Below are positions 16,728 through 59,315 of a stretch of 64,000 nucleotides of DNA, piece by piece; within the stretch, counting starts at the first letter, position 1; every line of letters starts with the position of its first letter. The stretch spans positions 557,884 through 621,883 of the forward strand of contig MU008180.1 in the NCBI GenBank assembly GCA_010909165.1, read 5' to 3'. Made by a program: the position numbers and the translations under genes. The notes beneath the pieces were generated by a model. The model made no database searches. It had not been told where the DNA came from and saw nothing but the letters and a program-made list of their open reading frames with translations. Source of the DNA: Anthoceros angustus. Taxonomy: Eukaryota; Plantae; Anthocerotophyta.

Positions 16728-18659
16728 GGGTGTTGCATGGTTTGGTGCTCACTTTGGTGCGTAACGGTTGAAACATCCTTCTTTTGTCCTCTTATATTGA
16801 ATATAATTTTATATAATTGATTTCATTTCCAAAGCAGTGCAGTATTTTATAGATGATAGTATTCTTATGTATGTATCGAGGTTAAAATATGAAATTAGAT
16901 TAGGGAAAAAAAGACCTTGAAAAAAAATGCCTTGGTCCGGGTATGCTAAGACGGGCAATGTCCTCGACACTTGTCCATTGTGCCATGTTATTTTACGAAC
17001 CGGGGAGCGAAGGAACCGGGGAGCGAAGGAGGGAAAATGGTCCGTTACCTTCTTGGCGCCCCACGACGCCGCGGCACTTGTTAATTTTATGGTGACATCA
17101 AGCATCTCGGTTTCATCAAGTACTTCAAACACGGTAGGAAGCCGTGCGAGCATAACTGTAGGTGATCTTGATGGCGCCGGTGGTGCTTCATTGAAGCCAC
17201 AAACAAGTTGGCTCGGTGGAGGTAGGCATCTACACGCAACAATCCGCCAATGGATGCACCATGAGGCGGGCTCGGGGAATGTACCCATTTGTTGCGTCGA
17301 GGCCGCGGTGGGTGGGTGAAATCTGAACCATGTAGAACTGGGTCCAAGCTAGATGTTTAGGGTTTGGTCTCACACGGGCGCGCATGGTTGCTGCAGGCCA
17401 TGTGAAGACATCGTTGTGCAGGAAAGGTCGTCTGAAGATCGGGCTTGGTGACTCTCTAGCGGGCAGACACGCATTTTCGGCCCCCTCAAAGAGGTATGGC
17501 ACGTTCACCGGGAAGCCAGAGGCGAGCATGGGCTGAGAGCAAGCGTCGCCAGGTCTGCACAAAAAGCTGTAGTGGCGAGCAAATCTGGAAGGACGGATGC
17601 ACAGTGTGATAGAAGTGGGCTATCTGAAAGCGTGGGGGCGGGGAGGCGGAGGGGGATGCGGTTGGAGACGGGCGAGGATCAAGCAAGGCTTGGGGATGTT
17701 GACCCTGTCTCACGGACCTCAACACAACGAGTCAAGAAGTGGAGAGCAGTGCAGGGGGCCTTGAGCGAATCGACAGGGAGCGTGGAATGCTCACTTCGTG
17801 TGAAACAGAGGGTGGCTCGGGAAATTGGTCAACATTTCTTGCATCTCACTTCTAGATACACCTCTGCGAGCAAACAAGACATCTTGGCGCTCTTTGGTCA
17901 CCGCTGAAAGAGTATCGGTGAGGCGCAAAGGCTGAAGGATAGCGAGGTGGCAATGATCATGCGAACTTGAAGGTTGCATGCTCAAGTTTGAAGGACGTGC
18001 AATTTGGAGACCATTTGGGCACTAACACGCTCTTCAACATGATTACATCTAAAGATATCAAAGGGAGCCACCTTGTTTCCTCGTTGTCTCGCCAAATAGG
18101 AGTTAGGGGAGGCATGTCGACGAGCCTTGGGTTCTCGGCAAGGAGATGTGCATGGTGAAATATCTCCGGTGTGGTGCGGTAGGAAGACACGGAGTGACAC
18201 AGGCGTGTGGTATGAAAGGCGTAATTGTTCGCTTTTGGGAACTCGCCTACTCATCATCGAACACCAAGGACACAAAGCGGTTCAATCGCTCCAAAGGCGT
18301 TCATCACATATCACTCGTTTCCTTGATATGTCTCGAGGTTGGCGCTAGGTCCATTATGTTAGTACTTGTGCTTTTTCCCTCAAGGCCGTGTTAAGGTGTC
18401 GAATCGATGTTCGATGTTGTTCCACAATGCTCTTGGGGGTGCATGTTGGGCATGATTTGCGTTAATACATCTCAAGTTTTGGTTGTCCCTTGCTTGAGCT
18501 GCCCGTTCGATGCTTTCTTTTCCTTTGGTCACCCTCGACTCTGTGGCCTCTTGGCATCCAGCCTCCCAAGACACAATGGTCACAGTGTGGGCAGGGACAT
18601 GTGCAATGACAGGTGCCCACTACGTGTGGACACTTGCTTGGTCCTGCATGGTGTCATGG

Positions 18660-21600
18660 TGTTACGAAATGGATAATCTGTCCGTAACCTCGCCGTCCAA
18701 CTAGTTACCGTAGATCGTAACTAATAGTAATTAGTAATTACGAACGGGTGTGCCTCTTCGGAAGAGACACCCACAAACACTATTTAAGACGATACTTTGT
18801 ATACATTTTGACATAGAGAGAATACCACAAAATATCTTCGAGAATGTAGCATCTCAATCATGCTAGACTAGATGCAAGGGATGCACAATCCCTTAGGATT
18901 TTAACATGGTATCGAGCATGGTTCACGCTTATGATCCTCTGAGTCTAGGGGAGATCACGTGCGGCCATCGTAAGCTCTCAACATGGAGAGTCGCTGGCGC
19001 AAACCAAGGCACATGGCTGCCTCGACGAAGAATGACCCACGAGCCTACAATAGCCTTGTGCACCCGCGCCGTGAGGCTCCATCGCGCCAGCCCACCACCG
19101 CAGCGCAAGGCGAGATGATTTCTTCACAATTTCTACCACGCACCGATCTGGACGCAAGCAAGCTTGGACCTCGGCCCACCAATTACACCGCAAGACAACA
19201 TGATCGTGAATTCCATCAATAGGCTGGAATTCAACAAACTTCTGCATTGAAGTCCTCCTCCGGATTGAAGCTATCTTGGTGCGCGTCACTTGTTGCGGGC
19301 ACACGAAAATCGAGATTTGGCCAGCAATTGCGGGCGAGAGGAGGCAATCCTTGCCTCCCTCACCCCAGCCATGAGCCAGAGAGGCAGCGCCCTCACCTCG
19401 GGGTGAACGGCGCGCTCCACAGACCCCATTTAGGGGTGTGTGCATGCAGCAATGCGGCCGAGGCGCTGTACCCTGCCTGATTGCGCACACCGTGCGCCGC
19501 GTGGCGCTCCGGTTGCGGGCGCAGGAGGTGCGCCCTGGCGGGGCGACCTCACCTCTGAAACCGCAGCGCTGAATCGTGCCCGGAGCACGGTGGGCAGGGT
19601 GCGTGGGAGGCGCACCGCGAGGATCCCCGGGCGCTGGTGCGCGTCAGAGCCACGGCCGAAACGGCGTGGCAGCGCCCAGCGCGCAGGCGGAACAGGCGCG
19701 CGCGCGGAACGGAGGGCGCGACCCGGCGGAACAGGCGCGCCCGCTCCCGCGGAACAGGCGCGCGCTCCGCGGAACGGGCCTCCCGCTTATCCCCACTGGT
19801 TTCTTTTTCAAAATAAGGTTTCCTCTGAGGCTTGCAGGTTTTGAACCTGCAACCTCCGCCGGTCAATGGACTTGCCACCAGACTAACCTGTCTTGGTTAC
19901 AATTGCACGGTTTTCACTTCTACTTAAAGAGTTTCAAAGTGGCATATATATGTATCTCTACACATATATATTCACCTGAAATATAAAGGCATATAGCGGA
20001 GCCAAAAAAAAAGGACAAAGGAGCAAGGAAGCAAGCCCCAGTGGAACACGAAAAAAAAAAAAAAGAGAAGAAAGTGGAGAGAAGTTAAAAGCCAGCAAGA
20101 GAGGGACTATTGTTTTCTTCAAGGATCTTTTGTCGGCACTCGTGGAGGAGAGATTCCTTTGTTCACCTGCCACACCAACAACCCGCGAGGATTCAACTTG
20201 AAGTTTTATGACCACAACTTACGAGGCGTGGTGAATCAACTTATACAACACTTCAACTCGCTTTCGCCATCGCTCCCATGGCTAGCATTTCCTCCGTGAG
20301 AAGTTCCTTCACCGACGGATCAAAGAAAGATAGATTCAATGGCCAACACTACCACATGTGGCGAGTTCGCATGAAGTCCATCGATAGGTCGAGGTGTTTG
20401 GAAGATTGTTGACGCACCCTTCCAAGCCTAACTCTTGACCACACCTCCCACTGTTGATATTGAGATGGGACTACTTGAATGGGATTGCAATTGCCCTCCT
20501 CATCAGCGGACTCGACTCAAGCCTGGTGCCTAGCGTGGAGTTCCTCACGGAGGCTTCTGCAATCTGGGACCAGTTGTCTAACACCTACAATGTTAAATAA
20601 TGTTCTAACCTTGTACAGTGTACGGCAGGAATTCAACTCCTTGAGGATGAAGGAGACCGATGCGATTTCTGCCCACACCTCGAAGTTCGACCAAGGGCAA
20701 CTCGCCTCCCTTGGCTCAACCATGTCGGAGACCGATGCCACGCAAGTAATGAGCTTACCACCGTCTTACCACAACCGTGACCACCGATGTTGGTATCGAC
20801 TCATGGTAAGTCGGTACACCCTCCACCCTTACGGTGGAAGATATTATTGGTGCTCAGACCAGGAGCAGCCGCCTTAGCTCGCAGGAGGGTCCAAGCCCGA
20901 TGCACGTAGCCCACCCATTTCAAGCCGGAGGAATTCAAGGGCAAGGCGAACTCACCCTAAAGGTGACTCAACCTGCCTCCTCGCCGATGGGTAACCGCAT
21001 CGTGCGGAGCTGCCATTGGGCACGAGTGCCGCAAGAAAGAGGCGGAGAGCCGAAGGCGAGAGATAAGCTGGCGGCTTAAAGGGAGCGCCAAAGACAACGG
21101 AGAGAGAAACCGTAAAGATACTTATGGTTTGCCTCAACACCGAGTTGCATAAGGATGCGGGTATCTCGGACTGGAGCCACCGACGTAGTAACCACTGTAC
21201 TGCTCACCAAGTGAATACTCATCCTCTCAAGGAAAGGGTGTTACTCGGATTGAGTAGATCTAGCCCGCCAATCGCGGGACAAGGCACTGCAATTTCCTCT
21301 CAAGGATGGTTCGCTTACCTTGGAGCCTGTGCTCCTCGTCCATAAATGGGCAAGAACTTGATCTCGATGACTCATCAAGCAAGGCGATCTTGAGATGCTT
21401 GTTTCAAGGGGTCATGCTACTTCTTCAGGACCACAAGTCGACTGTGCCTATTCGGTCTGGTACCTCAAGGCGGCTTGTCAGCTTTCATTACCCTTCAAAG
21501 GGAGCCAAAGAGGAGCATCGCTCCATGGGAGATAGCTCCCATTCATGAGGTTACGCCAAATTTTAAGAGAGGAGTGTTACGAAATGGATAATCATGTAAC

Positions 21601-21819
21601 CTCGCCGTCCAACTAGTTACCGTAGATCGTAACTAATAGTAATTAGTAATTCTGACGGGTGTGCCTCTTGGAAGAGACACCCACAAACACTATTTAAGAC
21701 GTACTTTGTATACATTTTGACATAGAGAGAATACCACAAAATATCTTCGAGAATGTAGCATCTCAATCATGCTAGACTAGATGCAAGGGATGCACAATCC
21801 TACTGCTAGGATTCTAACA
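18660..21819 (+). mobile_element. Non-autonomous Ty1/Copia LTR element (gag plus protease remnant only; TR-GAG-like), TSD CATGG
   Basis: LTRs 18660-18906 and 21575-21819 (TG...CA); PBS tggtatcgagc; PPT aagagaggag; CATGG on both flanks. Gag motifs FNGQHYHMWRVRM, FNSLRMKE and knuckle GHWARECRK. No integrase, RT or RNase H. Confidence 0.9.
19826..19890 (-). promoter_or_regulatory. tRNA-like Pol III A/B-box module inside the Copia leader
   Basis: Minus strand: A-box-like TAGTCTGGTGG, perfect T-arm GCAGG-TTCAAAA-CCTGC, and a T4 run shortly downstream. No full cloverleaf. Confidence 0.5.
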
Positions 21820-24800
21820 CATGGTCACCTCAAATGTAACATGGTGACTACCTGGCAATTTATGTGACTCTATGGTCTTGTTGTAATCACATGGCCACGG
21901 ATACTGTGCATATTCTGACAGGTGCTACTTGTCCCGATGGTCATGCACGTAGGTGGCCAGCCCGTTCTGTCCGAGTGGGCTTGGGGTCATGTCCTTGGGA
22001 TACGTGGGTAGTGGGTCACTTTCCCTATGACCCACTGCCCACTCGGGGCTGGATACATTCAGCAAGCCTGACACAAGTCGTTGTGGTGTCTGCAGACAGA
22101 GTTCTATCTCCGCTTTTGTCAGGAGCACCCGGACGTCCATGTTGGGCAAAGGACATTTGAGAAGTTGAAGCCTTTTTACGTGAAGAGTTTGCAGGAACGT
22201 AATCTTTCTTTGTAGATATCACGTAGAGATGGCATTTTAAAGGATGCTTTGAATGGCTGCGTGGTTCGATTTCGAGATTCACTCCGTGGCCATTGCCTTT
22301 GTTCTGCATGGTATGTGCCCTATCGACCACACCAAGCCTTCCATGTAATCTGCCTCCATACATGCAATCGGTGAGGGAGCTATGTGAGCGTTGTTGTGTC
22401 CAAAGGGACGGATGAAGCTGGCATGCCCTTGCATGCGAAACTTGTGACGGATGTGGGATTCCCAAGCTTTTGTTACATCCATCGAGACCTCGTAGACATT
22501 CAACCACAAGCTATTCTAAAGTGGCGTTGTTTCCGATGCAGTGGTTGGTCGAGCCGGATGGGAATGATAAGAAAGCGTATCAAGCTTGTGTTCATGGAAA
22601 CACACCCTCGAGTTTGTGTTTCACTTCAAGGTAAAGCTCAAGGAGTTTGTCTTTGCATGATTTTGTGCAGTGGCAAGGGATAGAGTTCGGTGCTTGGAAT
22701 GGTTTCCACAAGGCGTAGTTGTTTACATCATGGACTTCTCCCAGAACTATGCATTTGGTGTCTAGAATGAGATACAGTCTATGCACTGGCAAAATGATCA
22801 GGTATCAATCTTCGTGTTGGTGTTCTACCGTGGAATAGCTCTGTGGATGCGAGATGATCCTGCTGCATCCATCGAGAAATACTACCATTTTTACATTAGT
22901 GATCATGATGATCTTGTTCATGACACGCTGTTTGTGCAACATTGCTTGCTCAAGCACTGGCAATGGATGCAGGATGCAGGGTTTCCCAGACCCCGGGAAC
23001 ATTGGTGCTGGTCGGATGGGACTGCAAGCCAGTTCAAGGCATGCCGCCCAAGCTATTTCATTGCTCGCTACCCAAGCCTCACAGATGGGTGTAACATGCT
23101 CTGGTCATACTTTGGGAGTGGCCATGGGAAGGGGGAGCACGATGGTGCAGGTGCGATCTTGAAGCGATCGCTACGGGCAGCGGAGTCATCTCCGACAGCA
23201 AGGCGAATGCAGAATGCAGCGGATGTTGTGGAGTACTTGTCCGCAACCATATCGGGCGGGGCAGCAAGTTCATATGCCTCTAGGCAGCATGGGGTGTGAA
23301 GTTTTGGTTAATTGGTAAACATGAGGTAAGCAGGAGGGCCAAGCATGGTTGTGATCCTATTCACGGTTCCAAGACAATGCAACCTCTACATGGCACCAAC
23401 GCATTTGTTGATGCGGCGCTGGCATGCTTTGTGTTGGCTTAGAGCAACCATTCAAAGCGTGAAGTTCCACACCAGGCTGTTGGGCCTGTGAGGATCAAAC
23501 CTCATGCCCGAGCATTGGTCCCAGCGTAACTCGAGGCAGTAATCACGCAACATTGTTGGAGGATGCGGTCCTCCTTCCCCCTCCTCCTAATCTCGTTGAA
23601 AATGACATCGACATGATGTGTCGGACATGGCGGATGTCCTCAGTCGGGACAACTTCCTTGTACTTGCCGACCATGAAGATGAAGGTCGAGCTTTTACCTA
23701 CTTATTTGTGTATTCACACATTGCTTCACGATTCTTTGCCCATGGTCTAATGTCACTTACAAAGCGGGGATTACGTAGTGCGTCATTACACTCAAGAGGA
23801 CACACTTTTGTTGATTGTCTGAATGGATATGGACAACATGCATTCTTCCAGCCCATATTGTTCAGACATGCAAGTTTGAAATGGAGGTGCATGGACAACA
23901 TGGTGATGACCTTTTGTTTGTGCTCACAAAAGAGGCCTTACAGGTAGTGAAAGGTGTTGTGCAAGAAAGTGTACAAGATGCTTCCGTCATGGGCCCTTGA
24001 ATGTCACTTGCATACTTGTCACTGAAAGACCCAAGGATGATATGATAAATCCACTGGCTTGAAATCCATTGTGGAGCACATGAGTGTAATCGTCTCCTCC
24101 GAATTCGTATGTCTCGATTGATATCGTGCATATGCTTGGCGTGGCTAGTGTGATGTGGAACATGACCAAACACGGCGCCATGTGCATCCTGTGACCCATC
24201 GATACTTGCAGCGTCCCCATGAGCTACCTCGTGGCCATAATGTCCCAACATGTGGGTAGTGATTAATCATGGACCCACGCGTGTGTAATAGCAAGTCTTC
24301 AATGTGGCAACCTTGATGGCATCGTGTGCATCATGTCATTGAACTCAATCGTGACTTGTCTTCCCCTTGAGCCACGCGGGCATTGTGCACCAACTTGTTC
24401 TTGTCCTTTGCGTGGCTCCGGGTTCTCCGCGCCATGGCATCCGTGGTTGAGGCGGAGGGATGGTGGATGCCTTAGGCATCCGCCTCGGCACCGACTTGGT
24501 TGCGCAGCTCGCCTCGTCGAGGCACTTGCTCCCCATTCCAGTTATGCGGTGTGGCGGTGAACTATTTGCAACGCATGGCGGTAAGCGCGATACTCCGGAT
24601 GCAAGAGGAATTGTTGCTAGCGCCCTATGTGAGGGCGGGCTGCGCTGCCCGCCCTCTGTATGTGGGAGGAGGCGGCGTCTCCTCCCACCTCCTCCCGTGG
24701 ATTCGTGCGTGATGCGACATGGGCGTGGTGGATTGAGGAAGGCCAAGCGCGTCAATCCTCTTCGCAGGTAAGGCACCAATGCCATTTGTGTATTTGCTTG

Positions 24801-26369
24801 CCATCCTCGATCCACGTGAGGGTCGGGACAAGCTTAGGTCTTGCTAGGCATCGTGGTCTAGTAGTTCACGATTGTAAATGAATAGCATCTTGTGCTCCAA
24901 ATCTAGAAGTTCATGTTTGATCGATGGTCGGAATGGTGTCCTTTAGATTCAAGCTTCTTTGGATTCCATCCCTTGTGTGCGAGTTCAAAGCATTGCGTAT
25001 AATGCAACGCATTGCACATATTCGTAGTACCACGCAATGCCCGACAAGATCAACTGAGCTTTCATGTCACATCAATCTAAGCGGCTACGATGGATCGAAC
25101 TTATGAAGATAGCTTTACCAATGCGGAGGCTTAATTATTCGGTCTTAATTAATCGGTCAATTAATCAATCATGCTCAATGTTTCGGAAAGGAATTTGTGC
25201 CAGTCATTGAGTGTTACGTGAGCCTGCCGCGATCTCTCAAGCGTTGTCCAAAAGCGGTATTCAACTACATCGAGCACCACAATACCGATGTACCGCGCCT
25301 TGCCTTGTGCCCTCAAAACTCTGCGCGGAAACATTTGCCACATCGCCTTCTCTTCATGTTGCTGCCACTTCGTTAGATGCTCCAACCAGCATCGTGTGGA
25401 CCAAGCCAATACAATTGCTTCTCTTTCTTATCATCTAGCTTGTCTTTCTGCACCTTCACCATTTCGAACTTGGTGGCAACTATCATGTCAGGCGATACCA
25501 GAGTTGGCACACCACGCTTCCCAGAATCCATCAGTTGATATAGACCAGGCGTTTTGGTTCTGCTCATAATATAAAGCCCTTGCAACAGATTCTCCTGCTT
25601 CCCACGGTCCAGAACCCCATACAGTATCGGTGTAGTCCTCTTGCAAGGGCTCCCATGTCGACACGCACTTGAGAACATAGAACAAAACTTTCTCCTTGTT
25701 ATTTGGAAGTGCAAGAACCATGAAGTTATCCCCCACATCCAGCGATGCTGCATCATGTTCTACACTTGGAGGGCACTGCAAATCCTCCACTGCCACAGCC
25801 TTCTTTTTTCCACGCCCTCCCTTAGCAGGCTTTGAGACCCTACTAGAAATGGCCACCTATGTTACACTTTTTGTTAAGATTTGAACCCCCCCTTGTTGCA
25901 ATTATGTTAAAATCTTGGGGTCTTGTTACACTTATTTGGCCCCTTGTTATAGTCAGGCTTGGTAACCAACCCTCCATCTTGTTACAATTCTGATCTTGTT
26001 GCAATTTTGTTGCGATGTAGTGAGGCGGTATTTGGCCCTTTCAAAATTTCAACATATTTGCAACAACCAAAGTGTTACACCCTCTTTTATTCTGATTTTG
26101 CGAGGCTTGGTACGAACCTCCTTCCCATGTGGGTTTGCCATTATTGCTTTCATTCCTTTGTTTTCCCTGCCTTTATTGTTGTCGTGTACGGACTATAAGT
26201 ATATAATATGCCTTGGCTTCCAGTGCGTATTGCCCGATGTCATTACTCAAATACATATCGATGCCTTTTCAAATTATGTACACGTACAAGTGGTATCGTG
26301 TTGTGCACTCCGTTTTGCAATACGTGCGGCCCGCAAATTTCTGGCGTTTGTTTCCACCCTATTACTGCG

Positions 26370-29300: not shown

Positions 29301-29450
29301 AGGCAAGGCGACCTACCCCTCCTCATCCCCTCCACCTTCCCACGGTCTCCTCTCACGCCGGCGTCGACGCCTCCCGATTTGGTAGGTTTCGGCCGCATAC
29401 GGTCGACATCCTTGGCCACCTCTATCCGTCTCCGCCATTTTACGTGCATG
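26370..29450 (-). pseudogene. Probable CACTA TnpA-like second ORF, fragmented
   Basis: Coding-like fragments downstream of TnpD on the same strand (e.g. RKPSMVDDEEWEDAL; terminal PIRDAHKGTKYE resembling the Tnp1 C-terminus). Confidence 0.4.
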
Positions 29451-29699
29451 CGTTCACCTTCCTTCCCTGCAATTTTTGGCTCCCTCTGTAGGCAACCTTT
29501 TCCTTCCTTCGTCCCTCATGGCGGTGTATCGTGCACTCGTCCATACAAGGCTGGCCTTAGATTTGAAACATATGAGCCATCCTTGGCGTCCTTGAGGCAA
29601 TTCGAAACATGGCCAGCGCGCTTCTGCACTCATATCCCTTGTTCATTGACTTCCTTAGCCTACCATCGGCAGCGTCACCAATGTGCATTCGAGGCATTT

Positions 29700-39840: not shown

Positions 39841-39923
39841 AGCCATAAACAAATAGTATACAAGCCAATAATAGCTATGGTAAGCCATAAACAATTAGTA
39901 TACAAGCCAATAATAGCTATGGT
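39841..39923 (+). repeat. 42-bp tandem duplication in the CACTA right arm
   Basis: aagccataaaca(a/t)tagtatacaagccaataatagctatggt twice. Confidence 0.9.
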
Positions 39924-41131
39924 AGGGAAAACAGGTTGATATAGGAATTATGGCTGTCAGGTGGTAGAGGAAGGAGACAATTAATGAGAGACAATTAATG
40001 AGCATGTTAGTGTGATATCCAGGTTTGGGCGCCATTAACAATAGTTGTGAGAGAGTGCAATGAAGAGCAATAGGAAAAACATTAACTAATTGTACTTCCA
40101 ATGGGGTGTAATAAAGGGGGATAGAGAGAGAGGGTCCTTGTTATCATGTTGCATTTGCATGAGGGAATTCATAAACAATGCGTATGAGAGGGATGTAGTT
40201 AAGAGGGTGAAGTGGTAGGAGAGAGAGCAAGGTTCGTGTTAAGATTGTAGGCCCAATGGAAAGAAATGACAAACTTAATACCAAGCCTCCAAATGATGTT
40301 GCAAGTTACAAGTGTAACATAAAATTGCAACAACGATAACATAGGGGCCATTTCTAGTAGGAGAGTGGCTTCGCTTCAATGGTCCGGGCCTTCGCCCGCA
40401 CACCCATGGGATTATGCTCGTCGAGTCCACCGGTGGCATAACCATTTTTGGGTCTCCTCCTCGAGCTTGGTGCACTGTCACCAACTTCTCCTTCTCAATG
40501 ACCTTGGCATGAAGCACAGGGGTGACCACGTCGATCTTAGTGGCATGCTGGTCACGGCAAAGTGCCACCAGAGAGCACGAACTCACCACGTCAGCTCGGG
40601 CATGCTGGTCATGGCAAAGTGCCATTAGTGCACGAGAAGTGACCACTTCTTGTCGAGTGTCCACTGGCACACATATCCCCATATGCCGTCGTGCAGCACT
40701 TCGGCATCCAGTGCCTGTGCATCCACATGTGGGCCTAGGGGTCAACATCCGCTTGAATAACTCCCATCTCATGGCGAGGCCATGGGTACTTCTGTTTTTC
40801 TCCTTCACAACTACACAATGCGCACTTCAAGAGGGTGTCAAATTCCACATCCAGGGCTTCCCTTCAAGCTCCACTCTTGCCGCAATCAAGTGCAAGGCCT
40901 CCCAGTTGGAGTGAAAGGCCCGTTAACCCGGCCCGCAATGGCTCCTGCATGTTGATCTCGCCAGCCATTGTGCACAAACCCGTGGAAGAGCAGTTCTTCA
41001 ACCGTGTTGTTCTCACTTGTTGCTCCTAGAGTTGGGGCTGCCACACATGTTGCCATAAGGTGCATCATCTTCAACTACCTGTGGTGTGGCGGGATGCCTC
41101 GGCACATAGTCAGCCACCGGGAGGGTTTGCC

Positions 41132-47100: not shown

Positions 47101-50100
47101 CGCCACATATTGCACCGGACCAAACCACGTTACGCAACATCCCTAATATAATGATGATAAAGCTCGATATGCTTTGTTCTCGCATGAAACCTAGGATTAG
47201 CAACAAGAGCGATAGCCGACATATTGTCACAAAACAAGGAAGTGGCATCCTCCTGTGTCAACTTGATAGAATCCAAAAATTGCCGTTCCCATTATTCCAC
47301 CTCTTTACAAGCATCAGTTAGTGCCTTATATTCGGCCTCCGTAGAAGAAAGTGCCAAGGACGCTTGTTTCTTGCATGACCGTCAAGCTAAAATGCACGCC
47401 GCCGACAAACTCCTTCTAGTGTCGACATCACCGCCATCCCGCGCAAAGGATGTAAGAGTAAACTCTTTGCTGCCACTTGATGTATAATGAAGACCATAAG
47501 CCAATGTACCCTTGAGGTAACGATATATCCTCTTCAGATTCCGGTGAGGTTTACCCGGGTTCTTAAGCGAGAAACAACGATAAAATATGGCCTAGTCAAT
47601 TAGTACGGAAAATCAAACACCCAATTGCTTGAGAAGGCAGTAGACATATCTTCCTTATCGCTTCATGCGGAGGCTGCTCTATCGTAAGCTTCTCCCCGAA
47701 TAAGGAGTTGTTGCGTCGAGCATCCTCCAAATGGAAGCGTGTTAATATTTCCTTAAAATATTTTGTTTGATGAAGAACAATAACCCTTGTGTCTCTAAGG
47801 ATTTGAACTCCTAAACAAAACTCCAGAGGACCACAGTCGGTCATCTCGAACTCCGACATAGCCTTGACTTCATCCATCTGCATACTATTACTAAGTAGGA
47901 TTGCATCATCCACATACAAAGCTAAGATTACAAACAAGGCGCTGCTAAAAGATAGAAAACATTTGTATGTCGCCAGATCGAATGAACCCTAGCGTTTCAA
48001 AAACTTCATAATCCGCTTAAACCGGGCTCTCGGACTCTTTAATCCATATAAAGTCTTGAGCAACTTACAAACCTTCTTTGGAAACTTCTTACTAACAAAC
48101 CCTTATGCGTCATATAGAGAACCTCCTCAAGTTCACCATGCAGACAAACATCCATTTGATGAAGTTCTAAATTAAACTCCACCATAGCTAAAAGTATGCG
48201 GATGATGGAGGCTTAACAACTGGACTAAAGGTGTCTCCATAATCAATTCTGGAATTTGACTAAAGCCCCTAGCAACCAATCTAGACTTATATCTAGCAAT
48301 GGTCCCATCACTTTAACTTAGTTTTGAAAACCCATTTACAAGTTATAGGCTTTCTCCCAGTGGCGATCCACAAGCTCCCAAGTGTTATTTTTAACAAGAG
48401 AGTTATACTCATACGCTATGGAGACCGCCAATGTTCCCCATCGGGCCATCTAAAGCTTCTCTATGTGAGGATCCGGTCTAACCTCGTATGGAAATAAATG
48501 CTACATTATTTGAAGACTTCCTAAAGTCTATAGAATCGATACATTCAATCCAGCGATCACGAGTACGACGCTCTCTCAATGAATATACCGGGCGGGATCT
48601 GCTGCGGGAGGGGAACAATTCATCAAGACCAGCAACCTCATCATCAAGGGAAGCATGAGAAGAAGTGGACTGCACATCATTAGAAACAGGTGAATCAACC
48701 ACACCAGGTATGGCAGCCGTATCATCTACCGCAACAGGTTCTGGAGCTAAAGGAAACTGTTCACCATCCAACGCTCCATCCGTCTGTGGAAACATAACCT
48801 GAACAGGGCCACTCATATCCTCCTGCACATCATCCATAGCGTCAGGAGCTAAAGCAGTAGAATCAGGCTGTGGAGAAGTGATCTCCTTAAAGGTAACACT
48901 CCCCGCGTCATCTTATAGGTCGTAGGATCAAACAACTTGTATGCTTTGGATTCTTCCGAGTAGCCAAGAAAAATAAGAGGCTTCGACCTTGCATCTAACT
49001 TCCCCCTCTTGGCCTCGGGAATGAATGCAAAAGCAGGAGATCCAAAAACACGTAAATGAAGAAGACTTGGCTTGCGCCCCCAAAAGGCTTCATAAGGCGT
49101 GCAACCAAGAAGTCACAACTCTATTCAAAATATAAGTAGCTGCAACTACGGCCTCAGCCCAAAAGGATTTAGGAAGACCTGCCCAAGCCAACATGCTCCG
49201 AGTCATTCCCATCAAGGTTTGATTCTTCCTTTCAGCAACTCCATTCTGTTGTTGTGTATAAGGAACAGAAAGTTGACGTATGATCCCATACTGCTGAAAA
49301 AGCTCATCAAACCTATGGCGATCTCTCCACCATTATCGTCAAAGCACTTGACCAAATGTCTGTTTGTCTTTGAACCATAGGAATCCATGAGGAGATATGC
49401 TCAAAGGCGTCACTCTTCAACGCAAGGAAAGGTCCATGTATAACGTGAAAATCATCTGTGAGAAAGATAATACTCGGACCCACCAAGTGATTTCACCGGA
49501 AGCTTTCCGCTAGATCTGCATGTATCAACTCCAAAGCTTTAGCTCGAGTAGTAGATTGATTCTTAAGGCTCCTTCGCTTGGACAAGATACACGCATCGCG
49601 ATCGCGATGCGAGGAAGGCCAGATCTTCACCGCCTCCCTTGCCATAAAGTCTCGAATTGAGCGCAATTGACAGCCCGGTAACCGCACATCGAGTAGATGA
49701 TTTCCGCCCCTTGACTCACCAAATCTCCAAGAAGCTGCAATTCTAACGGTAAAGCAATCGAGACGGGTCGCCGCCTAGCCTCGCCATCCAGATGCGCCTC
49801 GAAGCCGATCTTTGTCGGAAAGAAACGTGAATTGTGCTCTCCTCCTCCTCCGATCAAGTTAGGGAAATCACTTAGGGATTCTTCCCGAGACACGATCCCA
49901 TCATAGAACAAGTCGCGGTGACGGAGCATGTTGTGATCTCCTACCACGGCCCGATCTCACTGATTCTACAAGCTCGCCAAGAACCGAGAATGAATCCGTC
50001 AAAACACATCTTCCCCACGCGCCATCAGGAGAAATGAGGCATTTATCACGAGATAAATACACCAGCAAATCTCCACAACATTTTTCCATAGACAATGGCT

Positions 50101-52042
50101 AGCAAATCATCTACAAAATAATGGATTGTGGCAAAAAGAAATTCCATGGCTCATACCATGATAAAGACAACATATATTGAAAATAAGAGCAATAATACAA
50201 AAGTAAATCGTCCATGTTTAAATAGTATATTAAGGATAACCCTTAATCAAACTAATCTACCACTAACCGAGTTAGGGTAAACATAATTAACTCTAACAAC
50301 TCACGTGTTTCTCCGAGTCACCGTCCTTCATCCTTAGGTTCTGAAAATTCCTTAGATTGCATTGCGCTTACCATGTTCGCTCAGAGAGTTCCTTTAGACG
50401 ATTCATGATTTCTCAAGTATTCACCTCATGCCTCAACATCTCGGTTGTCGCCACCTGCGTATGAGGTATTTGGCTCCGCAGCTAACCATTCTTCCTCTCC
50501 AAGATCCTCGTCTGGTTTCACTACTTTTCCAAGAGCATGTTTGAGGAGGCCTCTCATTTCGAGAACGCCCTCCATTCTTATAAGCGATGTCAAAGTCATT
50601 TCCGTTGAACCTCCTTCTCCTTGAAGGACTCACGCTTCCAAAATTATGTGTAGAGGATGTGTCACCCATTTTGGGTTCAACTCCTAAGAGTTTGTCCTCC
50701 TCTGTTGAAGAAGCTTTCTAATGTGTCTTCTTCACGGTCACTAGCATGAACACTATCATGCACTGCGGCCACTATTCTCACCATCCATACATTCTACTTA
50801 CAATGCGTGTTGGTTTTGTGGTTGCTCCCAGCTCTGCGTGCGCTATGGTTTGTTCCCAAGTGCGACTATCTTAGAGTTTCTCATCTCAAACTTATTGAAT
50901 GCGTAAGTGGAGCATGAAGGGCAAGAGTTAGGTGTATCAAACTTCCTTTCATGCTTAGTTTTACTTACGTGCTTGCATCATGCCTCGAATCGGGTTGGCC
51001 AACAACTCTGGTTTCAACATTACAAGCTTGTAATCTAAGTGTGTTAGCTCTTTCAAATCCTGCGGATCAATGCTAGCTAGCGACATGACCAATCGACGAC
51101 ATCCTGTATTCCTATTGTTAGCCTCAAGACGCTGAACAATTGTGTTTACACCTCATTGTACAACGCTTTGTGAGGAAGCGTTGGTGTATGTTCTCGTAGT
51201 GGGCGATGTTGCACCGTCTCAATTGTGAATGTCAAGTCAAGCTCTGGGACAATTCGAGAAGTGTGTTGAAGGCTCCCAATGTGTCTCCTTGTGCTTGATT
51301 TGGGCAAGTTGCTCCACGTAGGATGCGCCCATGTAATTGATGTGCCGGTTTGTCTCTCGGCATTTCGTCGATCCCGCTTGGATTTTGATTGTTCCTCCTA
51401 GGATTCACCGGGATTTTGGTAGATGTAATTTTCCATGGCTATGTGCCACGATTGTATATACAATGCGTAATTCCTGCATTTTTCTGTTTTCTTTATATGA
51501 TTTTACATACATTTTGCACTGCTCTAGTGTGCCTCCATTGAATTGCTCAAGTAGCAACTCAACTGAGTGCGACTATCCTCTCGATCTTGCGTAATCTATA
51601 TGAATTCATCAAAATAAAAATAGAAATAAAACAAGAATGCACCCATTCTTTTTCTATCTTATGTTTCTTGATTTTAACTTATTTATAAAACAAGAAAACA
51701 ATCAAAGAAAACATTGTGCATATTTTATGCACAATTTCAATGTGCATTCATTTGAATGCAACCTACACTAGGTAACGATACCATGAAGATTTTATGGACT
51801 AATGTAGATCAATTAAACATTATAGAATAATTACATTGTTGGATCAAGAAAGAAGTAAGTTGCTTATGCATGAAAAGACAACTAAACTAAATTTAATGAA
51901 AGCGTTGTATCTATTCACTTAGAGACGTAACCCTAATGAAACGACACCATATCTAGTAAACCCTAGCTTATCATATCTTGGTAATATATGGATAACTTAA
52001 ACCCCTAAACCCTAACTATGATATCAACATTGTATATCATTA
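41132..52042 (-). mobile_element. Ty1/Copia LTR retrotransposon with TA...CA termini, TSD TTGCC; gag-PR-INT and truncated RT
   Basis: LTRs 41132-41385 and 51784-52042; PBS tggtatc next to 51783; PPT caagtgggag; TTGCC on both flanks with empty site at ~55686. Gag begins MGDTSS...FNGNDF (50669); integrase LELVSDLCGP; RT stops after FLNGKLD (~43455). Confidence 0.9.
45969..50298 (-). mobile_element. Ty1/Copia element with ~140-bp LTRs, nested in the gag of the previous element; pol present, gag absent
   Basis: LTRs 45969-46110 and 50159-50298 (TG...CA); PBS tggtatgagc; PPT taagtgggg. LELIHADL, QQNGVAERKNQTL, ALYVDD, FEMTDCG, ALSSTEAEY. TSD ACTCA, one base missing on the left. Confidence 0.92.
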
Positions 52043-52980
52043 TTGCCAACAATTGTGTGACACTGCACCGAGCAGTTCTGACATCATCCATTGGACCAGC
52101 ATTGTTCCCCATTGGAACGACAAGGTCAGGTGTGTGTAAAACATATTTTTGCATTTCCATCCAGGGGCGTACGGGTGGTGTTCGGCTCAATGGAATAGGT
52201 AGTCGCTGAGCATGTGGTGGCGTTGCAGTGACATGGGTATCTTCATGAGACAGCCGAGAGGCGGCAAGCCAAGCACGCTATATGTGCCTACAATAACAGT
52301 GCAAGCAACACTCCTGAGAAAGATAAATAGACACAAAAAAAAAAGGGTCCAAGGTTCAATGCGTAGCTGACCTGGTGACTCTAGCATGTTCTTCCTGTTC
52401 ACAGGCAGGATCTCACTTTGTCGTGGCAATGGAGTGTTTCCCAACCCTCTGGCAAAACGTGCATCCATGCTTTCGTAGTCCCTGAGAAGTTCAATGTATT
52501 CCGCTGTCCAGTCCTCTTCTTCATCTATATGCCATGAGTCATTGGGCATGGTACTTATAAAAGGCCACCCTCTTGATTTAATCCATATTGGGTGCACATC
52601 AAGGTTGCACAGCGAGGCGCACGCGCTCCCAATGCTGGCTCGAACGCGGCTACGATGGATCGAACTTATGAAGATAGCTTTACCAATGCGGAGGCTTAAT
52701 TATTCGTCTTAATTAATCGGTCTTAATTAATCAATCATGCTCAATGTTTGGAAAGGGCGTCGGCGTCCCGCTATGAGTGTTCGAGCTGTGCACGATCTCT
52801 CAACGGCGTTGTCCAAAAGCGGTATTCGCCGGGCGATCACACAATACGATGTACGCCCGCCTTGTGCCCTCAAAACTACCGGACGCATGCCCAACCTTTC
52901 CCCACCCTGCATCAAACCCACACGACACATCTACCTTCCGCCGAAAACATGGCAACCGAACCATGGCTTAAAGCACAGCG

Positions 52981-55900
52981 TCATGGACAAGATGATGACC
53001 TTTTGTTTGTGCTCACAAAGAGGCCTTACTGGTGAAAGGTGTTGTGCAAGAAAGTGTACAAGATGCTTCCGTCATGGGCCCTTGAATGTCACTTGCATAC
53101 TTGTCAATGAAAGACCCAAGGATGATATGATAAATCCAGCTTGAAATCCATTGTGGAGCACATGAGTGTCTTGTCTCCTGGAATCGCTCTCTATGTCTCG
53201 ATTGATATATGCATATGCTTGAAACCGGCTAGTGTGATGTGGAACATGACCAAACACGGCAGCCATGTCATCCGCGTGACCCATACATCGATACTTGCAC
53301 GCGTCCCCATGAGCTACCTACCGTGGCCATAATGTCCCAACATGTGGGTAGTGATTAATCATGGACCCACGCGTACAGTGTAAGTAAGCAAGTCTTCAAT
53401 GTGGCAACCTTCAGTGGCCTGATGCACACTCGTGTGCATCATGTCATTTGAACTCAATCTGACAGACTTGTCTTCCCCTTGAGCCACGCGGGCATTGTGC
53501 ACCAACTTGTTCTTGTCCTTTGCGTGGCTCCGGGTTCTCCGCGCCATGGCATCCGTGGTTGAGGGGAGGGATGGTGGATGCCTTAGGCATCCGCCTCGGC
53601 CAAACTTGGTTGCGCTCTGCCTCGATGGTCGAGGCACTTGCTCCCCATTCCCGGTTATGCGGTGTGGCGGTGAACTATTTGCAGCGCCGGCGGTAAGCAC
53701 GCCGATACTCGGATGCAAGAGGAATTGTTGCTAGCGCCCTATGTGAGGAGGCGGGCGCCGCCCTCACCGTATGTGGGAGGGAGGCGTCTCCCTCCCACCT
53801 CCCGTGGATTCGCGATGCAAACATGGGTGGTGGATTGAGGAAGGCCAAGCGCCGTCAATCCTCTTGGCAGGCGACCAATGCCATTTGTGTATTTGCTTGC
53901 CATCCTCAGTCCACAGTGAGGGTCAGGACAAGCTTGGGTCTTGCTAGGCACTGTCGTGGTCTAGTAGTTCACGATTGTAAATGAATAGCTCTTGTGCTCC
54001 AAATCTAGAAGTTCATGTTTCGATCGATGGTCAGGAATGGTGTCCACTTTAGATTCCGAAGCTTCTTTGGATTCCATCCCTTGTGTGCAGGTTCAAAGCA
54101 TTGCGTATAATGCAACGCATTGCACATATTCGTAGTACCACGCAATGCCCGACAAGATCAACTGAGCTTTCATGTCACATCAATCTAAGCGGCTACGATG
54201 GATCGAACTTATGAAGATAGCTTTACCAATGCGGAGGCTTAATTATTCGTCTTAATTAATCTCTTAATTAATCAATCATGCTCAATGTTTGGAAGGGCTG
54301 TCGGCTCCTGAGTGTTGAGCTGCGCAGTGATCTCTCTCAGCATTGTCCAAAAGCGGTATTCAACTACATCGAGCGATCACACAATACGATGTCTGCCCGC
54401 CTTGTGCCCTCAAAACTACGCATATCTTTGAAACATTTGCCCTGTCGCCTCTTCATGTTGCTGCCCTGTTCTTCGTTAGATGCTCCAACCACTGTCTGTG
54501 TGTAGGACCAAGCCAATACAATTGCTTCTCTTTCTTATCATCTGGCTTGTCTTTCTGCACCTTCACCATTTCGAACTTGGTGGCAACTATCATGTCGAGC
54601 GATACCAGAGTTGGCACACCACGCTTCCCAGAATCCATCAGTTGATATAGACCAGGCGTTTTGGTTCTCGCTCATAATATAAAGCCCTTGCAAGATTCTC
54701 GCCACCTTCCCGAACCCCATACGATGTCGGTGTAGTCCTCTTGCAAGGGCTCCCATGTCGACACGCACTTGAGAACATAGAACAAAACTTTCTCCTTGTT
54801 ATTTGGAAGTGCAAGAACCATGAAGTTATCCCCACATCCGCCGATGTCGCATCATGTTCTACACGGAGGGCACGCAAATCCACGCCACGCCTTCTTTTTC
54901 CACGCCCTCCCTTAGCGGCTTTGAGAGTGGCTTCCGTTTCAATGGTCCAGCCTTCGCTCCGCACACCCATGGGATTATGCCTTGTCGACCGTCCACACCG
55001 TGGCATAACAGGGTCTCCTCCTCGAGCTTGGTGCACCGACCAACTTCTCCTTCTCAATGACCTTGGCATGAAGCACGGGGGTGACCACGTCGATCTTAGT
55101 GGCATCCCGGTCACGGCAAAGTGCCACGAGCACGAGCGACCACGTGTTCTCGTGGCATCGGTCATGGCAAAGTGCCATTAGTGCAGTGACCACTTCTTGT
55201 CGGTGTCCGCACACATATCCCCATGTCCACTGCACTCGCCGTCGATCAAAGGCTGCATCCACATGTGGCCTAGGGGCTGCAACATCTGCTTGAATAACTC
55301 CCATCTCATGGCAGAGTGCCATGGGTACTTCCTCGTGTTTTTTCTCCTTCACAACTACACAATGCGCACTTTCAGTAGGTGTCAAATTCCACATCTGTAG
55401 GGCTTCCCCTTCAAGCTCCACTCTTGCTGCACAATCAACAGTACCAAAACCCTCCGTTGGAGTGAAAGGCTTCGTTAACCAGTCTGGCAATGGCTCCTGT
55501 GCATGTTGATCTGCCAAAGCCATTGTGCACAAACCTGGTGGAAGAGCAGGTTCTTCAACCAGGTTGTTCTCACTTGTTGCTCCTAGAGTTGGGGCTGCCA
55601 CAACACATGTTGCCACATAAGGTGCATCATCTTCAACCATCGGTGGTGGCGGGATGCTCTGTCCACATAGTCACCGCCGAGGGTTTGCCAACAATTGTGT
55701 GACACCGCACCGTGAGTTCTCGATCATCATGGACCATTGTTCCCCATTGGAGCGACAAGGTCGGTGTAAAACATATTTTGCATTTCCATCCGGGGCGACG
55801 GTGGTGTTCGCTCATCGGAATAGGTAGTCGAGCATGTGGTGGCGTTGCGATGACATGGGTATCTTCAAGTGTAACAAGGAGAGCGGGCAAGCTCGCTATA

Positions 55901-56205
55901 TGTGCCTACAAAAAGGCAAGCAACACTCACGAGAAGGATAAGCAGACACAAAAAAAAGGGTCCAAGGTTCAATGCGTGATTGGTGACTCTAGCATGTTCT
56001 TCCTGCTCATGTGGTTCTCACTTTGTCGTGGCAATGGAGTGTTTCCCAACCCTCCGCAAACGTGCATCCATGCTTTCGTAGTCCCCAGAAGTTCAATGTA
56101 CCGCCCTCCTCTTCTTCATCTATATGCCATGAGTCATTGGGCATGGTACTTATAAAAGGCCACCCTCTTGATTTAATCCATCTTGGGTGCACATCAAGGT
56201 TGCAC
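52981..56205 (+). repeat. Direct duplicate of 23890-25837 + 40362-41131 + 52043-52610, without the two insertions
   Basis: Colinear near-identity throughout, reading straight across both insertion junctions. Confidence 0.92.
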
Positions 56206-58303
56206 CCCCTGTGAGGGCAGGACACGGAGGCCTGTAACGCTTGGAACAAACAAGCATCGTGGAAGCAATGCCCGCATGGCAAGAAGACCTGCTCATTACA
56301 TGAGAACCACCTGGTACAAACGCAACACCGTGTAACCTGCAGGGGCGCGGCAGCACTTGAGTGGCTAGGAGCTGGAATCCACTGTGGAATTGAGCCATCC
56401 ATCTTCCTCATTGCATGTATGCGTTTGAAAGCATCGGTCAGCTCCTTGGCCGATTGACATCGTTGTTCAAGCTCTTGGTTTTCTATTGGTGAGGAGGCCG
56501 CGCTTCCGTAATGTTAGCGGCTCGAACGTACACCGCAGCTGTGAACCGAAATTACCTTGTAGGTTAGACCTCGCGGAAGGCAACAAGGCGAGGCCGGAAA
56601 GTCAAGAGGTGAGCAAACTCGTCTTTGCTTGGTCGCCATCCCAGTGCACAAATAAGCTCACCACAAAGAAGCTTCGCGTTAGTCAACTTGGAATGCTCCT
56701 CCGTGCCTTTCTTTGTGAAACGGGCTTCTTCTGACAACCTTGCAAGCTCTAACATCGCTTGAGATTGGACCTTGGTCTCACACTCATCGTCTCCCAATTT
56801 GGCAAATCCAATGCTGGAAGCAAGGAGGGAAATTAAAACCGTGATGGCACATCGGGTGATCACGTGACCAAGAACTCATGGGAGGTGACCACCGGATAGC
56901 ACCACTGGTCACGGGCCATGAGTGGCCACGACCACCGGCTTTAATGCGGTGATCGTGGTATGAGTGGGCACCTCACCACTGACTTCACAGATGATGGTCA
57001 GGTGACCATATATGCCCAAGCACACACAAGCAAAATCAGAAAACGGTCAAGCATTGATGAATCCATATTGTGACCATGTGAATCTGTGGCTGTGTCAAGA
57101 CCACCACCACAGTGCCCATATGGGACAGAACCCACAGTGATACAACCAGCAGTTCAACGCTTAGCCTTGTCGTGACGCGTGGCACAGGATCCAAACATTC
57201 GGGCACACCATGTAAAGCGACACGCCGATGGAAAAACAAATGAAACTCATCTGCTCGCAGCTGAAGGGTCGAATTGGAAGCCTGCCTCAGGAATGTGCCC
57301 GCATCACCCACAACCCACAACACTCACAACCACCAAATTAGCATGGTCCCGCTGATTCCAATAAAACCCGAGTGAGAACTCTAAAATCGCAGGAGAACAA
57401 AACATCGCAAGTAAGTCACACCAAGCCGATGGAAGCATGAACAAAACTACCAGACGCAAAGATGCCCAACCTTTCCCCACCCGACCTGCATCAAACCCAC
57501 ACATGACACATCTACCTTCCGACGAAAACATGGCAACCAACCATGGCTTAAAGCTCATGGCCATGGACAAGATGATGACCTTTCTCCACGCTTGGCACCT
57601 CAAAGATCATCCACGGTGGCATCACTATACCCTCCGCCTCTCCCATCCCGCCTGGCCTCCTGAACATCCCTAGCAACCTCAGGCTTGGTGTGCTGGCTTC
57701 CTCGGCTTTGTGACCTAGTCACAGGGCCCTGGGAGCCACCATGTGGCTGCACGGGGTTAGCTGCCCCGTTCTCCCCCTTCTTCCCTACCTTCTCTTCCAC
57801 AAGTGCCACCTTTCCAGTTTTTGCTTCCTTGCTCGCTTGCTTGTTGGCCTTCCTTCCTAGAACCACCGTTTTATAGGCTTTCTTACGCCTTCCAGATCTT
57901 CCACAAGAAAACCCAAAGCCATACATCGGGGAATCTTTTGGCCCGTGTTCGTGCTGGCACGTTTCCCATATACGGCAAACACAAGGTCGTCCAAACTTTG
58001 CCAATCCTCCTTTGACACCAAGTCGGTGGCTTCAAAGCTGTAGCCCTCTTGCGGTTGCAGAGGCACGCCAAAGTGATTTGTCACAACGTCCTTCCCACCA
58101 ATGCGCTCCTTCAGGCCTTGGACCAACTTGTCATCCCTAACATTCAATCCAACCTTTCGAAGATGATTATCACCATCATGCCACCTCCAGGGTCCATCCA
58201 ACACCGGAGCTTCTTCCAAGGCTGCCGTCACACGGTCGAATCTCTTGGTTGCTGAGAGGTTAGCACGTTTCGAATTTCGTGCGACATTGTAAGCGGTTGC
58301 CAT
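54268..58303 (-). pseudogene. Second (accessory) gene of the Sola2-like element with a RING-H2 finger; multi-exon, frameshifted as assembled
   Basis: Starts MATAYNVARNSKR; contains CCVC-x12-CGHCFHDAC-x10-CPHRGC; later WKCKICF. The C-terminal domain is best read in the other copy (25373-25856): VGDNFMVLA...FYVLKC...LQGLYY...IVATKFEM. Confidence 0.6.
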
Positions 58304-59315
58304 AGGAAGACGTGAGACAAGCCTACATGGAAAGCTTGGGGCGTGAGATGGTGGGTGCAAACAGAGAGAGGAGAGCATAAATGGAACAAAGGAGATGGCC
58401 TACTGCGGTTGAGCGTAGCGATGAGAGGAAAAGGCATGAGAAAGTAGATGAGAGGAAAGATCGGCAGAAGTAGGGGAGATTCACGTTTCCCAAATGATGA
58501 ATTAATGAGGTGTACTAAGTCAACCATAATCTAATATAGATATATTTACCCTTTTAAACTACCTTTTAACTTCCATAGGTTAAACAATAATATAAATACA
58601 CAGGTAAATTATAGGACAAAAATATAATATTTAAAACTTCAGCACTGATCATTTTATTACTCTATCATAGTAACCAAGTGTTCATGACTCTTTGGTCCCA
58701 AAGTGTGGCACCAAACCATGCCTCTACCCGTATTGTGCTACGGCGTCTGGATGAGGATGCTCATGTCCCTGGCTTCTGCCTGCATGGTGAGCGGGTGCTC
58801 ACTCTAAACGTGTATGTGGTTGTTGGGACAGGAGGGGCGTAAACCACCGGTCAGACATCTTGACCGCCACAGGCGTTTACCAGTGGTTCCTTCGAATAGG
58901 AGCGGGCGCCTATCCTCCGCAAGTGGTGCTGGAGGAGATGAGCGAGGCGGAGGCCAGAGCATGGAGGGAGGAGCACACGGTATGGTTGTCCAGCGAGGAG
59001 GAGCGGGACAACGGACATAGAGGTCACAGGCGCGCAACGTCCGCGGGAAGGCGCGAGGGAAACTCAGGCAGTGAGAGTGAGGTGGAGGTTGTGGGGGAAA
59101 ATCGCTCGGATCAGAGGCGAGGCCGAAGAGCGAGAGGGGTCCCCATGGGCCGTAGGCGAGGCAATCAGCGGAGGCGGCGAGATTTTAGGGAGTCGCGATA
59201 GCCTAGGACCGGGGTTTTTCGGCGAGGGATAGGGAGTTCCATCACCGAGAGCTGTTGCTTAGATTGGTAAGGCGCTCGTGGTAGGAGCTACAATTTTAGA
59301 CCTAAAGAGAAGTGA

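What the first reader, a model, noticed from the sequence alone, without database searches (positions are those of the whole stretch)
16728..58729. A two-gene Sola2-like DDD transposon in a plant-lineage genome, carrying a RING-finger accessory gene
Seen: GGG-starting imperfect TIRs sharing GCATGGTTTGGTGC..CACTTTGG enclose a plus-strand transposase (DFSQNY / SDG..QFK / HGKGEHDG) and a convergent multi-exon gene with a RING-H2 finger. Removing the insertions and the duplication leaves ~10 kb. Known: this motif set and GRG termini fit Sola2, mainly described from animals and protists; RING-H2 domains are typically E3 ligases; Arabidopsis VANDAL elements encode VANC anti-silencing accessory proteins. 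Inference: this may be an undescribed transposase-plus-E3-ligase system that manipulates host silencing or transposase turnover.
Basis: partly seen in the sequence, partly recalled or inferred. Interest (0 to 1): 0.85.

Follow-up and report, generated by a model that had tools for sequence, protein, structure and literature searches.

The report
Two-gene Sola-like transposon with RING partner
This is a real but broken copy of a cut-and-paste jumping gene. In mosses and liverworts its relatives keep a second gene that joins a fold resembling known plant anti-silencing proteins to a ubiquitin-ligase-type RING finger, a pairing I found in no paper; what the second gene does is untested.

Summary
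Observation mostly confirmed. GGG-starting inverted ends (16728, 58729; 0 of 100 shuffles) enclose a DDD transposase and a convergent RING-H2 gene. The core is 9,745 bp once three insertions and a 3.2-kb partial duplicate are removed. This copy has no target-site duplication and a stop in the catalytic region.

The pairing is conserved. Three of three long loci reached from the RING side carry a convergent related transposase (Riccia, Ceratodon, an apparently intact 12.2-kb element with three different flanks). A fourth relative has near-identical ends and a 4-bp duplication. RING and N-terminal domains show dN far below dS. The gene is not universal: some related transposases lack it.

Added here: the accessory N-terminal domain is modelled closest to the Plant Mobile Domain (TM 0.58), the fold shared with VANC anti-silencing proteins; the direct VANC21 match is weak (Z 2.8). 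The transposase C-terminus, duplicated in this accessory gene, is BAH-like (Z about 7).

Sola membership is likely; Sola2 was not tested against Repbase. E3 activity is unproven, and the RING lacks the usual Trp and linchpin Arg. The scan had already noted this family elsewhere in this genome.

The parts
16728..16757 (+). left terminal inverted repeat, starts GGG; left flank AAAA
17450..18340 (+). transposase 5' exon in frame-shifted pieces; boundaries approximate, assigned by eye against the first exon of the intact relative L092/L095
   Evidence: tblastn did not detect it, so inferred
18660..21819 (+). nested internally deleted LTR element (Copia-like by eye), TG..CA ends, 5-bp TSD CATGG, LTRs 1.7% substituted; lies where relatives have the transposase intron
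22095..24000 (+). transposase main exon: Cys-rich region, DDD core (D 22733, D 23015, D in HGKGEHDG at 23141), TAG at 22763, degraded BAH-like C-terminus
   Evidence: (43% to intact L092 over 227 aa, E 2e-40)
23890..25837 (-). duplicate copy A, part 1: transposase 3' end plus 3' part of the accessory gene with a BAH-like domain at about 25376-25763
25838..40361 (.). nested 14.5-kb CACTA/EnSpm-like element (CCCTA-type ends, 3-bp TSD AGA, DUF4218 at 30210-30971) inserted in copy A
40362..41131 (-). duplicate copy A, part 2
41132..52042 (-). nested LTR retrotransposon (about 260-bp LTRs, 5-bp TSD TTGCC) holding a second, Copia element at about 45964-50304
52043..52610 (-). duplicate copy A, part 3; ends just before the RING core, which is deleted in this copy
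52611..53003 (.). duplication junction: three short pieces copied from elsewhere in the element (56494-56529, 54189-54419, 57442-57583), joined at microhomologies
54456..58303 (-). accessory gene, complete copy B: PMD-like N-terminal domain (57860-58303), coiled coil (about 56350-56900), RING-H2 plus HPxW..G tail (56150-56327), low-complexity linker, BAH-like domain (54456-54851)
56150..56327 (-). RING-H2 finger, spacing C-x2-C-x13-C-x-H-x2-H-x2-C-x10-C-x4-C, with the family tail HPxW-x3-G
58698..58729 (-). right terminal inverted repeat, ends CCC; right flank GTAT

Best explanation
The locus is a decayed member of a bryophyte family of 10-12 kb Sola-superfamily (probably Sola2-type) cut-and-paste transposons that encode two convergent genes. 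Shown: GGG-ended TIRs, a DDD transposase, 4-bp TSD in a relative, and a conserved accessory protein built of an N-terminal helical domain, a long coiled coil and a RING-H2 finger. In this lineage the accessory protein also ends in a copy of the transposase's C-terminal domain. Inferred from predicted folds: the N-terminal domain is PMD/VANC-like and binds DNA, probably the element's own sequence; the coiled coil oligomerises it, as modelled for VANC; the BAH-like domain docks on nucleosomes or repressive histone marks; and the RING recruits ubiquitination (or acts as a scaffold) against chromatin or silencing proteins at the element. The most likely job is a locus-directed counter-silencing factor that keeps the element expressible and accessible. 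The window copy is probably immobile on its own (stop codon, 32 kb of insertions and duplication, no TSD).
For: TIRs beyond chance. Linkage from both sides: L001 with near-identical TIRs, 12.1 kb, TSD TTAG; L089 Riccia sorocarpa and L091 Ceratodon purpureus, reached from the RING protein, each with a convergent transposase; L092/L095 with long open frames, TIRs and three different flanks; L080 convergent. Five zinc ligands invariant and three at 90% or more across 26 sequences of 16-29% identity. dN 0.38-0.93 against dS 1.4 to saturated. N-terminal model pLDDT 94, top atlas hit PF10536 PMD, TM 0.58 over 113 residues; VANC21 9lnk is listed with 116 of 135 residues aligned. PMD and VANC share a fold and oppose silencing (PMC13547354; 10.1101/2024.09.27.615353). 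C-terminal model pLDDT 95; the top 10 and top 18 structural hits are all BAH-domain proteins, Z up to 7.4. Many Marchantia transposons carry H3K27me3 (10.1101/827881).
Against: The fold matches are moderate or weak: TM 0.58 between predicted models, VANC21 Z only 2.8 with rmsd 5.3, BAH Z under 8; there is no sequence-level hit to PMD, DUF1985 or BAH. The folds were predicted from relatives (P0131, L092), not from the noisy window copy. The RING lacks the usual E2-contact Trp and linchpin Arg. Related transposases in L002, L003, L004, L005 and L062 have no such gene nearby. No expression data. No experiment.
Confidence: 0.5

Rival explanations
1. The accessory protein is a transposition cofactor or dosage regulator, like MURB, CACTA TnpA or the Harbinger second gene. 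It binds the ends and the transposase, and its RING may ubiquitinate the transposase to limit it, without touching host silencing.
For: The convergent two-gene layout is like MuDR, where MURB binds MURA (PMC12973397). The window's accessory gene shares the transposase C-terminal domain, which could mediate a partnership. A DNA-binding fold plus coiled coil also suits end-bridging.
Against: Close relatives lack the gene or have other neighbours, so it is not obligatory for the clade. Most family members lack the shared C-terminal domain. PMD/VANC-fold proteins of known function act on silencing.
Confidence: 0.3
2. The RING is a structural zinc finger, not an active E3; the protein works only by DNA or chromatin binding and oligomerisation.
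For: The Trp of the central helix is present in 2 of 26 sequences, there is no Arg after the last Cys, the last pair is spaced CxxC or Cx4C, and a family-specific HPxW..G tail follows.
Against: All eight ligands of a C3H2C3 RING are kept; Pfam zf-RING_2 matches; from my own knowledge, active RINGs without Trp or linchpin exist; some members carry a second, C3HC4 RING.
Confidence: 0.3
3. The RING gene is a captured host gene fragment carried passively (Pack-type cargo) or a host gene lying between unrelated ends.
For: Other Sola-like loci have other neighbours (SET domain, RNase H1 N-terminal domain); this copy has no TSD.
Against: Three of three long RING-side loci lead to a related transposase; the layout recurs in a moss and a liverwort; purifying selection; tandem paralogs inside an intact multi-flank element.
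Confidence: 0.05
4. The 42-kb span is not one element but two partial copies (or an assembly chimera) joined at 52611-53003, so the two TIRs come from different insertions.
For: No TSD; copies A and B differ by 3.6-5.8% substitutions; the assembly is noisy in repeats.
Against: All junction pieces are copied from within this element at microhomologies. Three insertions with their own TSDs are specific to copy A or the intron, which a simple assembly duplication would not give. The two-gene layout holds either way (L001, L095).
Confidence: 0.25

Closest known systems
Sola superfamily DNA transposons (Sola1/2/3; Bao et al. 2009 as summarised in PMC10741241, PMC4455052)
   Same: DDD transposase without a Pfam match, TIRs, 4-bp TSD in relative L001, size within the reported range; Sola is known from Physcomitrella.
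   Different: A conserved second gene with PMD-like, coiled-coil and RING-H2 parts, and a BAH-like transposase C-terminus; I found neither described. Subgroup not tested against Repbase.
Sola1-1_Ec32 of Ectocarpus (PMC12477816)
   Same: Giant Sola element with an accessory gene on the opposite strand, proposed to act on its own chromatin state.
   Different: That accessory gene is ParB plus amino-methyltransferase, in Sola1; here PMD-like plus RING-H2.
VANDAL/VANC (DUF1985) anti-silencing system and PMD proteins MAIN/MAIL (PMC5735166, PMC13547354, 10.1101/2024.09.27.615353)
   Same: Transposon-encoded accessory protein with a PMD-related fold and a coiled coil.
   Different: VANDALs are Mutator-like and VANC is described as dicot-specific, with no RING known to me; here only a domain of about 120 aa resembles PMD, and the direct VANC21 match is weak.
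MuDR mudrA/mudrB, CACTA TnpA/TnpD, PIF/Harbinger two-gene elements
   Same: Two genes inside TIRs, convergent in MuDR and Harbinger.
   Different: Unrelated transposase and unrelated accessory protein; none has this RING family.

Membership tests
Sola superfamily | DDD catalytic triad in the transposase | tested here: met
   D in DF(S/A)(Q/E)NY, D in SDG and D in HGKG.HDG, conserved in the window and relatives; catalytic role inferred from motif conservation
Sola superfamily | Terminal inverted repeats | tested here: met
Sola superfamily | 4-bp target-site duplication | tested here: inconclusive
   absent in this copy; present (TTAG) in L001, which has near-identical TIRs
Sola superfamily | Transposase groups with Repbase Sola proteins by profile or tree | not testable with these tools
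   no Repbase sequences available; nearest atlas clusters are unnamed mollusc, rotifer and arthropod proteins, score 0.95-0.96; the tree holds only relatives
Sola2 | 5'-GRG termini | tested here: met
   GGG in the window, L001 and L095; the rule itself is recalled from memory, and the primary paper was not held
Sola2 | Transposase motifs closer to Sola2 than to Sola1 or Sola3 | tested here: inconclusive
   the SDG..QFK and HGKG..DG motifs fit Sola2 by recall only; no reference alignment
RING-H2 E3 ligase | C3H2C3 zinc-ligand pattern | tested here: met
RING-H2 E3 ligase | E2-contact Trp and linchpin Arg/Lys | tested here: not met
   Trp in 2 of 26, no basic residue among the common ones after the last Cys
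RING-H2 E3 ligase | Ubiquitin ligase activity | not testable with these tools
   needs an assay
PMD / VANC (DUF1985) proteins | Sequence match to PF10536 or DUF1985 | tested here: not met
PMD / VANC (DUF1985) proteins | Shared fold | tested here: inconclusive
   TM 0.58 over 113 residues to a PMD cluster; VANC21 Z 2.8
BAH domain | Shared fold | tested here: met
   top-ranked hits all BAH-domain proteins, Z 6-7.4, rmsd 2.4-3.9, about 86 of 124 residues; Z below the tool's safe level of 8
BAH domain | Pfam BAH match or aromatic cage for methyl-lysine | tested here: inconclusive
   no Pfam match; cage residues could not be mapped without coordinates

The most novel reading that the evidence does not exclude
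A second, independent plant transposon anti-silencing system, in Sola elements of bryophytes. A PMD/VANC-fold DNA-binding domain targets the element, a BAH-like reader engages repressive nucleosomes, and a RING E3 ubiquitinates host silencing factors or histones there. This would put PMD-fold counter-silencing far earlier than dicot VANC and add targeted ubiquitination as a transposon strategy.
Probability: 0.3. Interest if true: 0.85.

Novelty: new variant of a known kind. Interest (0 to 1): 0.62.

Why it matters
Proven anti-silencing proteins of plant transposons are rare, VANC being the main case, and VANC is thought to derive from host MAIN-like proteins in dicots. A conserved PMD-like, coiled-coil, RING protein in a different superfamily, in mosses and liverworts where H3K27me3 marks transposons, would show repeated recruitment of this fold and a possible ubiquitin-based route. 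The apparently intact 12.2-kb relative (L095) makes this directly testable in Physcomitrium or Marchantia. The BAH-like end of these transposases also suggests chromatin-guided target choice in Sola elements.

Tried and rejected
Pfam found nothing for the transposase core, the accessory N-terminal domain or the C-terminal domain; PDB sequence searches likewise. Foldseek against PDB and viral structures gave nothing significant for the N-terminal domain. The feature-based atlas search gave only scores under 0.8. A region search for N-terminal homologs returned only the query. No sequencing run was listed, so read laying was not used and expression is untested. No bacterial or archaeal relative in genome contigs. 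The primary Sola papers and the VANC21 structure paper were not held. Paper searches found no description of a Sola plus RING pairing; most subscription journals are outside the library. Considered and rejected: programmed readthrough of the TAG at 22763, because 15 of 18 distinct sequences have Gln there and the three stops fit C-to-T decay of a CAG codon; TIR chance match; copy A as a pure assembly duplicate, because it holds its own insertions with TSDs. For the tree, tblastn pieces were projected on a relative with X at stops.
Full report
OBSERVATION. The two ends are real. Position 16728 begins GGGTGTT and position 58729, read inward, begins GGGTAGAG; both continue with GCATGGTTTGGTGC, a 1-2 nt spacer and CACTTTGG. 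The pattern occurs exactly twice, once per strand, and in none of 100 shuffles. The four bases outside are AAAA and GTAT, so this copy has no target-site duplication. The transposase motifs DFSQNY, SDG, QFK and HGKGEHDG are on the + strand at 22733-23146, with a TAG at 22763. A C3H2C3 RING is on the - strand at about 56150-56327.

ANATOMY. Self-comparison resolves the 42 kb. An internally deleted LTR element (18660-21819, TSD CATGG) sits where relatives have the transposase intron; an acceptor-like CAG lies at about 22095. A 3.2-kb stretch from the last codons of the transposase to just before the RING is present twice. Copy A (23890-25837, 40362-41131, 52043-52610) holds a 14.5-kb CACTA-like element (TSD AGA, DUF4218) and an LTR element (TSD TTGCC) with a nested Copia. 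Copy B (52982-56205) is uninterrupted and continuous with the rest of the accessory gene. Repeats in this assembly carry 3-7 indel events per 100 nt even between LTR pairs that differ by under 2% in substitutions, while a neighbouring host gene has a 465-codon open frame. Many frameshifts may therefore be assembly error, and exon borders in the accessory gene are not established. Copies A and B differ by 3.6-5.8%, more than the LTR pairs (1.6-3.4%), consistent with duplication before the insertions.

IS THE PAIRING CONSERVED? From the transposase side: 102 relatives and 80 loci. L001 is a 12.1-kb element with TIRs close to the window's (GGGT..GCATGGTT), a 4-bp TSD TTAG, a transposase 50% identical and a convergent RING gene. 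L080 is also convergent; L087, L065-67 and L035 have a RING gene nearby in other arrangements; L002, L003, L004, L005 and L062 have none in the DNA held. Most other contigs are too short to tell. From the RING side: a search of 1.84 billion representatives yielded, among generic RINGs, a distinct family with a coiled coil before the RING and an HPxW..G tail after it. All three loci long enough to test held a convergent related transposase: Riccia sorocarpa (L089, KAL3676315.1), Ceratodon purpureus (L091, KAG0597150.1) and an ENA assembly contig of unnamed host (L092/L095). L095 is a 12.2-kb element with GGGTCCATGC ends, long open transposase exons (285 and 673 codons), two tandem accessory paralogs, and three different flanks in three contigs, which indicates recent movement. 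The window's first accessory frame aligns with the family's N-terminal domain. Between relatives, dN is 0.38-0.93 and dS 1.4 to saturated for RING and N-terminal parts, similar to the transposase. In the transposase tree the window falls in a supported 24-row clade with L001, L091 and L093, but the RING label is not significantly clustered and the window's branch is long (L089, L080, L087 and L065-67 dropped out for short coverage).

WHAT THE PROTEINS LOOK LIKE. The accessory N-terminal domain (modelled on P0131, pLDDT 94) has no sequence match anywhere. Its best structural neighbour in the ESM Atlas is a Plant Mobile Domain cluster (PF10536; TM 0.58, 113 residues), followed by three unnamed streptophyte clusters. 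In the PDB nothing stands out; VANC21 (9lnk) appears at Z 2.8 with the longest alignment in the list, 116 residues, which is a hint only. PMD and VANC are reported to share a fold, VANC is modelled to oligomerise by a coiled coil, and both oppose silencing (PMC13547354; 10.1101/2024.09.27.615353). The transposases end in a domain of about 120 aa (model pLDDT 95) whose top structural hits are all BAH-domain proteins: EBS, AIPP3, SHL, DIM2, Rsc2, DNMT1, ZMET2, ORC1, with Z 6-7.4. The window's accessory gene ends in a second copy of that domain (E 7e-21 in copy A), and so does L088; the moss and liverwort members do not. The RING keeps all eight ligands but usually lacks the central Trp and the linchpin Arg of canonical E3s.

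MECHANISM. Shown: a mobile two-gene unit with a selected accessory gene. Inferred: the PMD-like domain binds the element's DNA, the coiled coil multimerises, the BAH-like domain engages nucleosomes, and the RING ubiquitinates or scaffolds. I put locus-directed counter-silencing at about 0.5, a transposition cofactor or transposase regulator at about 0.3, and passive cargo at about 0.05. That the RING is catalytically silent is an overlapping possibility at about 0.3. H3K27me3 marks many transposons in Marchantia (10.1101/827881) and several of the best BAH hits read that mark, but no binding is shown here.

COMPARISON. It works like a Sola element (DDD, TIRs, 4-bp TSD in a relative; PMC10741241). 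Membership of Sola2 rests on GGG ends and motifs recalled from memory and could not be tested against Repbase. Sola is rare but known in plants. An opposite-strand accessory gene is known in Sola1 of Ectocarpus, but it is ParB plus methyltransferase (PMC12477816). I found no paper on a Sola element with a RING or PMD-like gene, within a library that lacks most subscription journals.

EARLIER NOTES OF THE SCAN. The same family was noted on several other pieces of this genome, including the shared C-terminal domain and a guess that it is BAH-like. Other notes call the genome a probable hornwort; I did not test that. These notes are unchecked; the evidence above is my own.

PROCEDURE. 

VERDICT. 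Real, conserved and apparently undescribed architecture; a new variant of a known kind; dead or damaged copy here; function untested. Interest 0.62.

Noticed in passing
window 10505-13300 (-): Host-like gene with AT-hook, PHD_Oberon finger (Pfam E 2e-16) and coiled coil, with long open frames, outside the element.
   Followed up: partly
window 13975-15010: AT-rich array of 38-bp and 123-bp repeats upstream of that gene, possibly the subterminal region of another element.
   Followed up: no
window 25838-40361: 14.5-kb CACTA-like element whose ends read CCCTA rather than CACTA; it holds a 1.4-kb array of palindromic units at 35420-36870.
   Followed up: partly
window 41132-52042: LTR element whose LTRs begin TA rather than TG when read on the - strand.
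   Followed up: no
L003 17138-20690 (-): Pre-SET/SET gene convergent with a related transposase; unknown whether cargo or host gene.
   Followed up: no
L002 12163-12486 and L004 12030-12353 (-): Cauli_VI (RNase H1 N-terminal-type) domain convergent with related transposases in two copies; a possible different accessory gene.
   Followed up: no
L095 1-12214: Apparently intact element with two tandem accessory paralogs, one with a second C3HC4 RING; three different flanks; best candidate for experiments.
   Followed up: yes
L035 3658-4917 (+): A more distant transposase is followed on the same strand by a 420-codon frame with coiled coil and RING but a different N-terminus.
   Followed up: partly
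L089 14765-16583 (-): Extra gene between the RING gene and the transposase in Riccia, with no Pfam match; may be an insertion or a third gene.
   Followed up: no
window 22763; L001; L037: The same Gln codon near the first catalytic Asp has become TAG in three sequences, consistent with decay of methylated CAG.
   Followed up: yes
window 60071-60202 and 61182-61454: G+C-rich 22-bp and 72-bp tandem repeats in the right flank, probably ends of another element.
   Followed up: no
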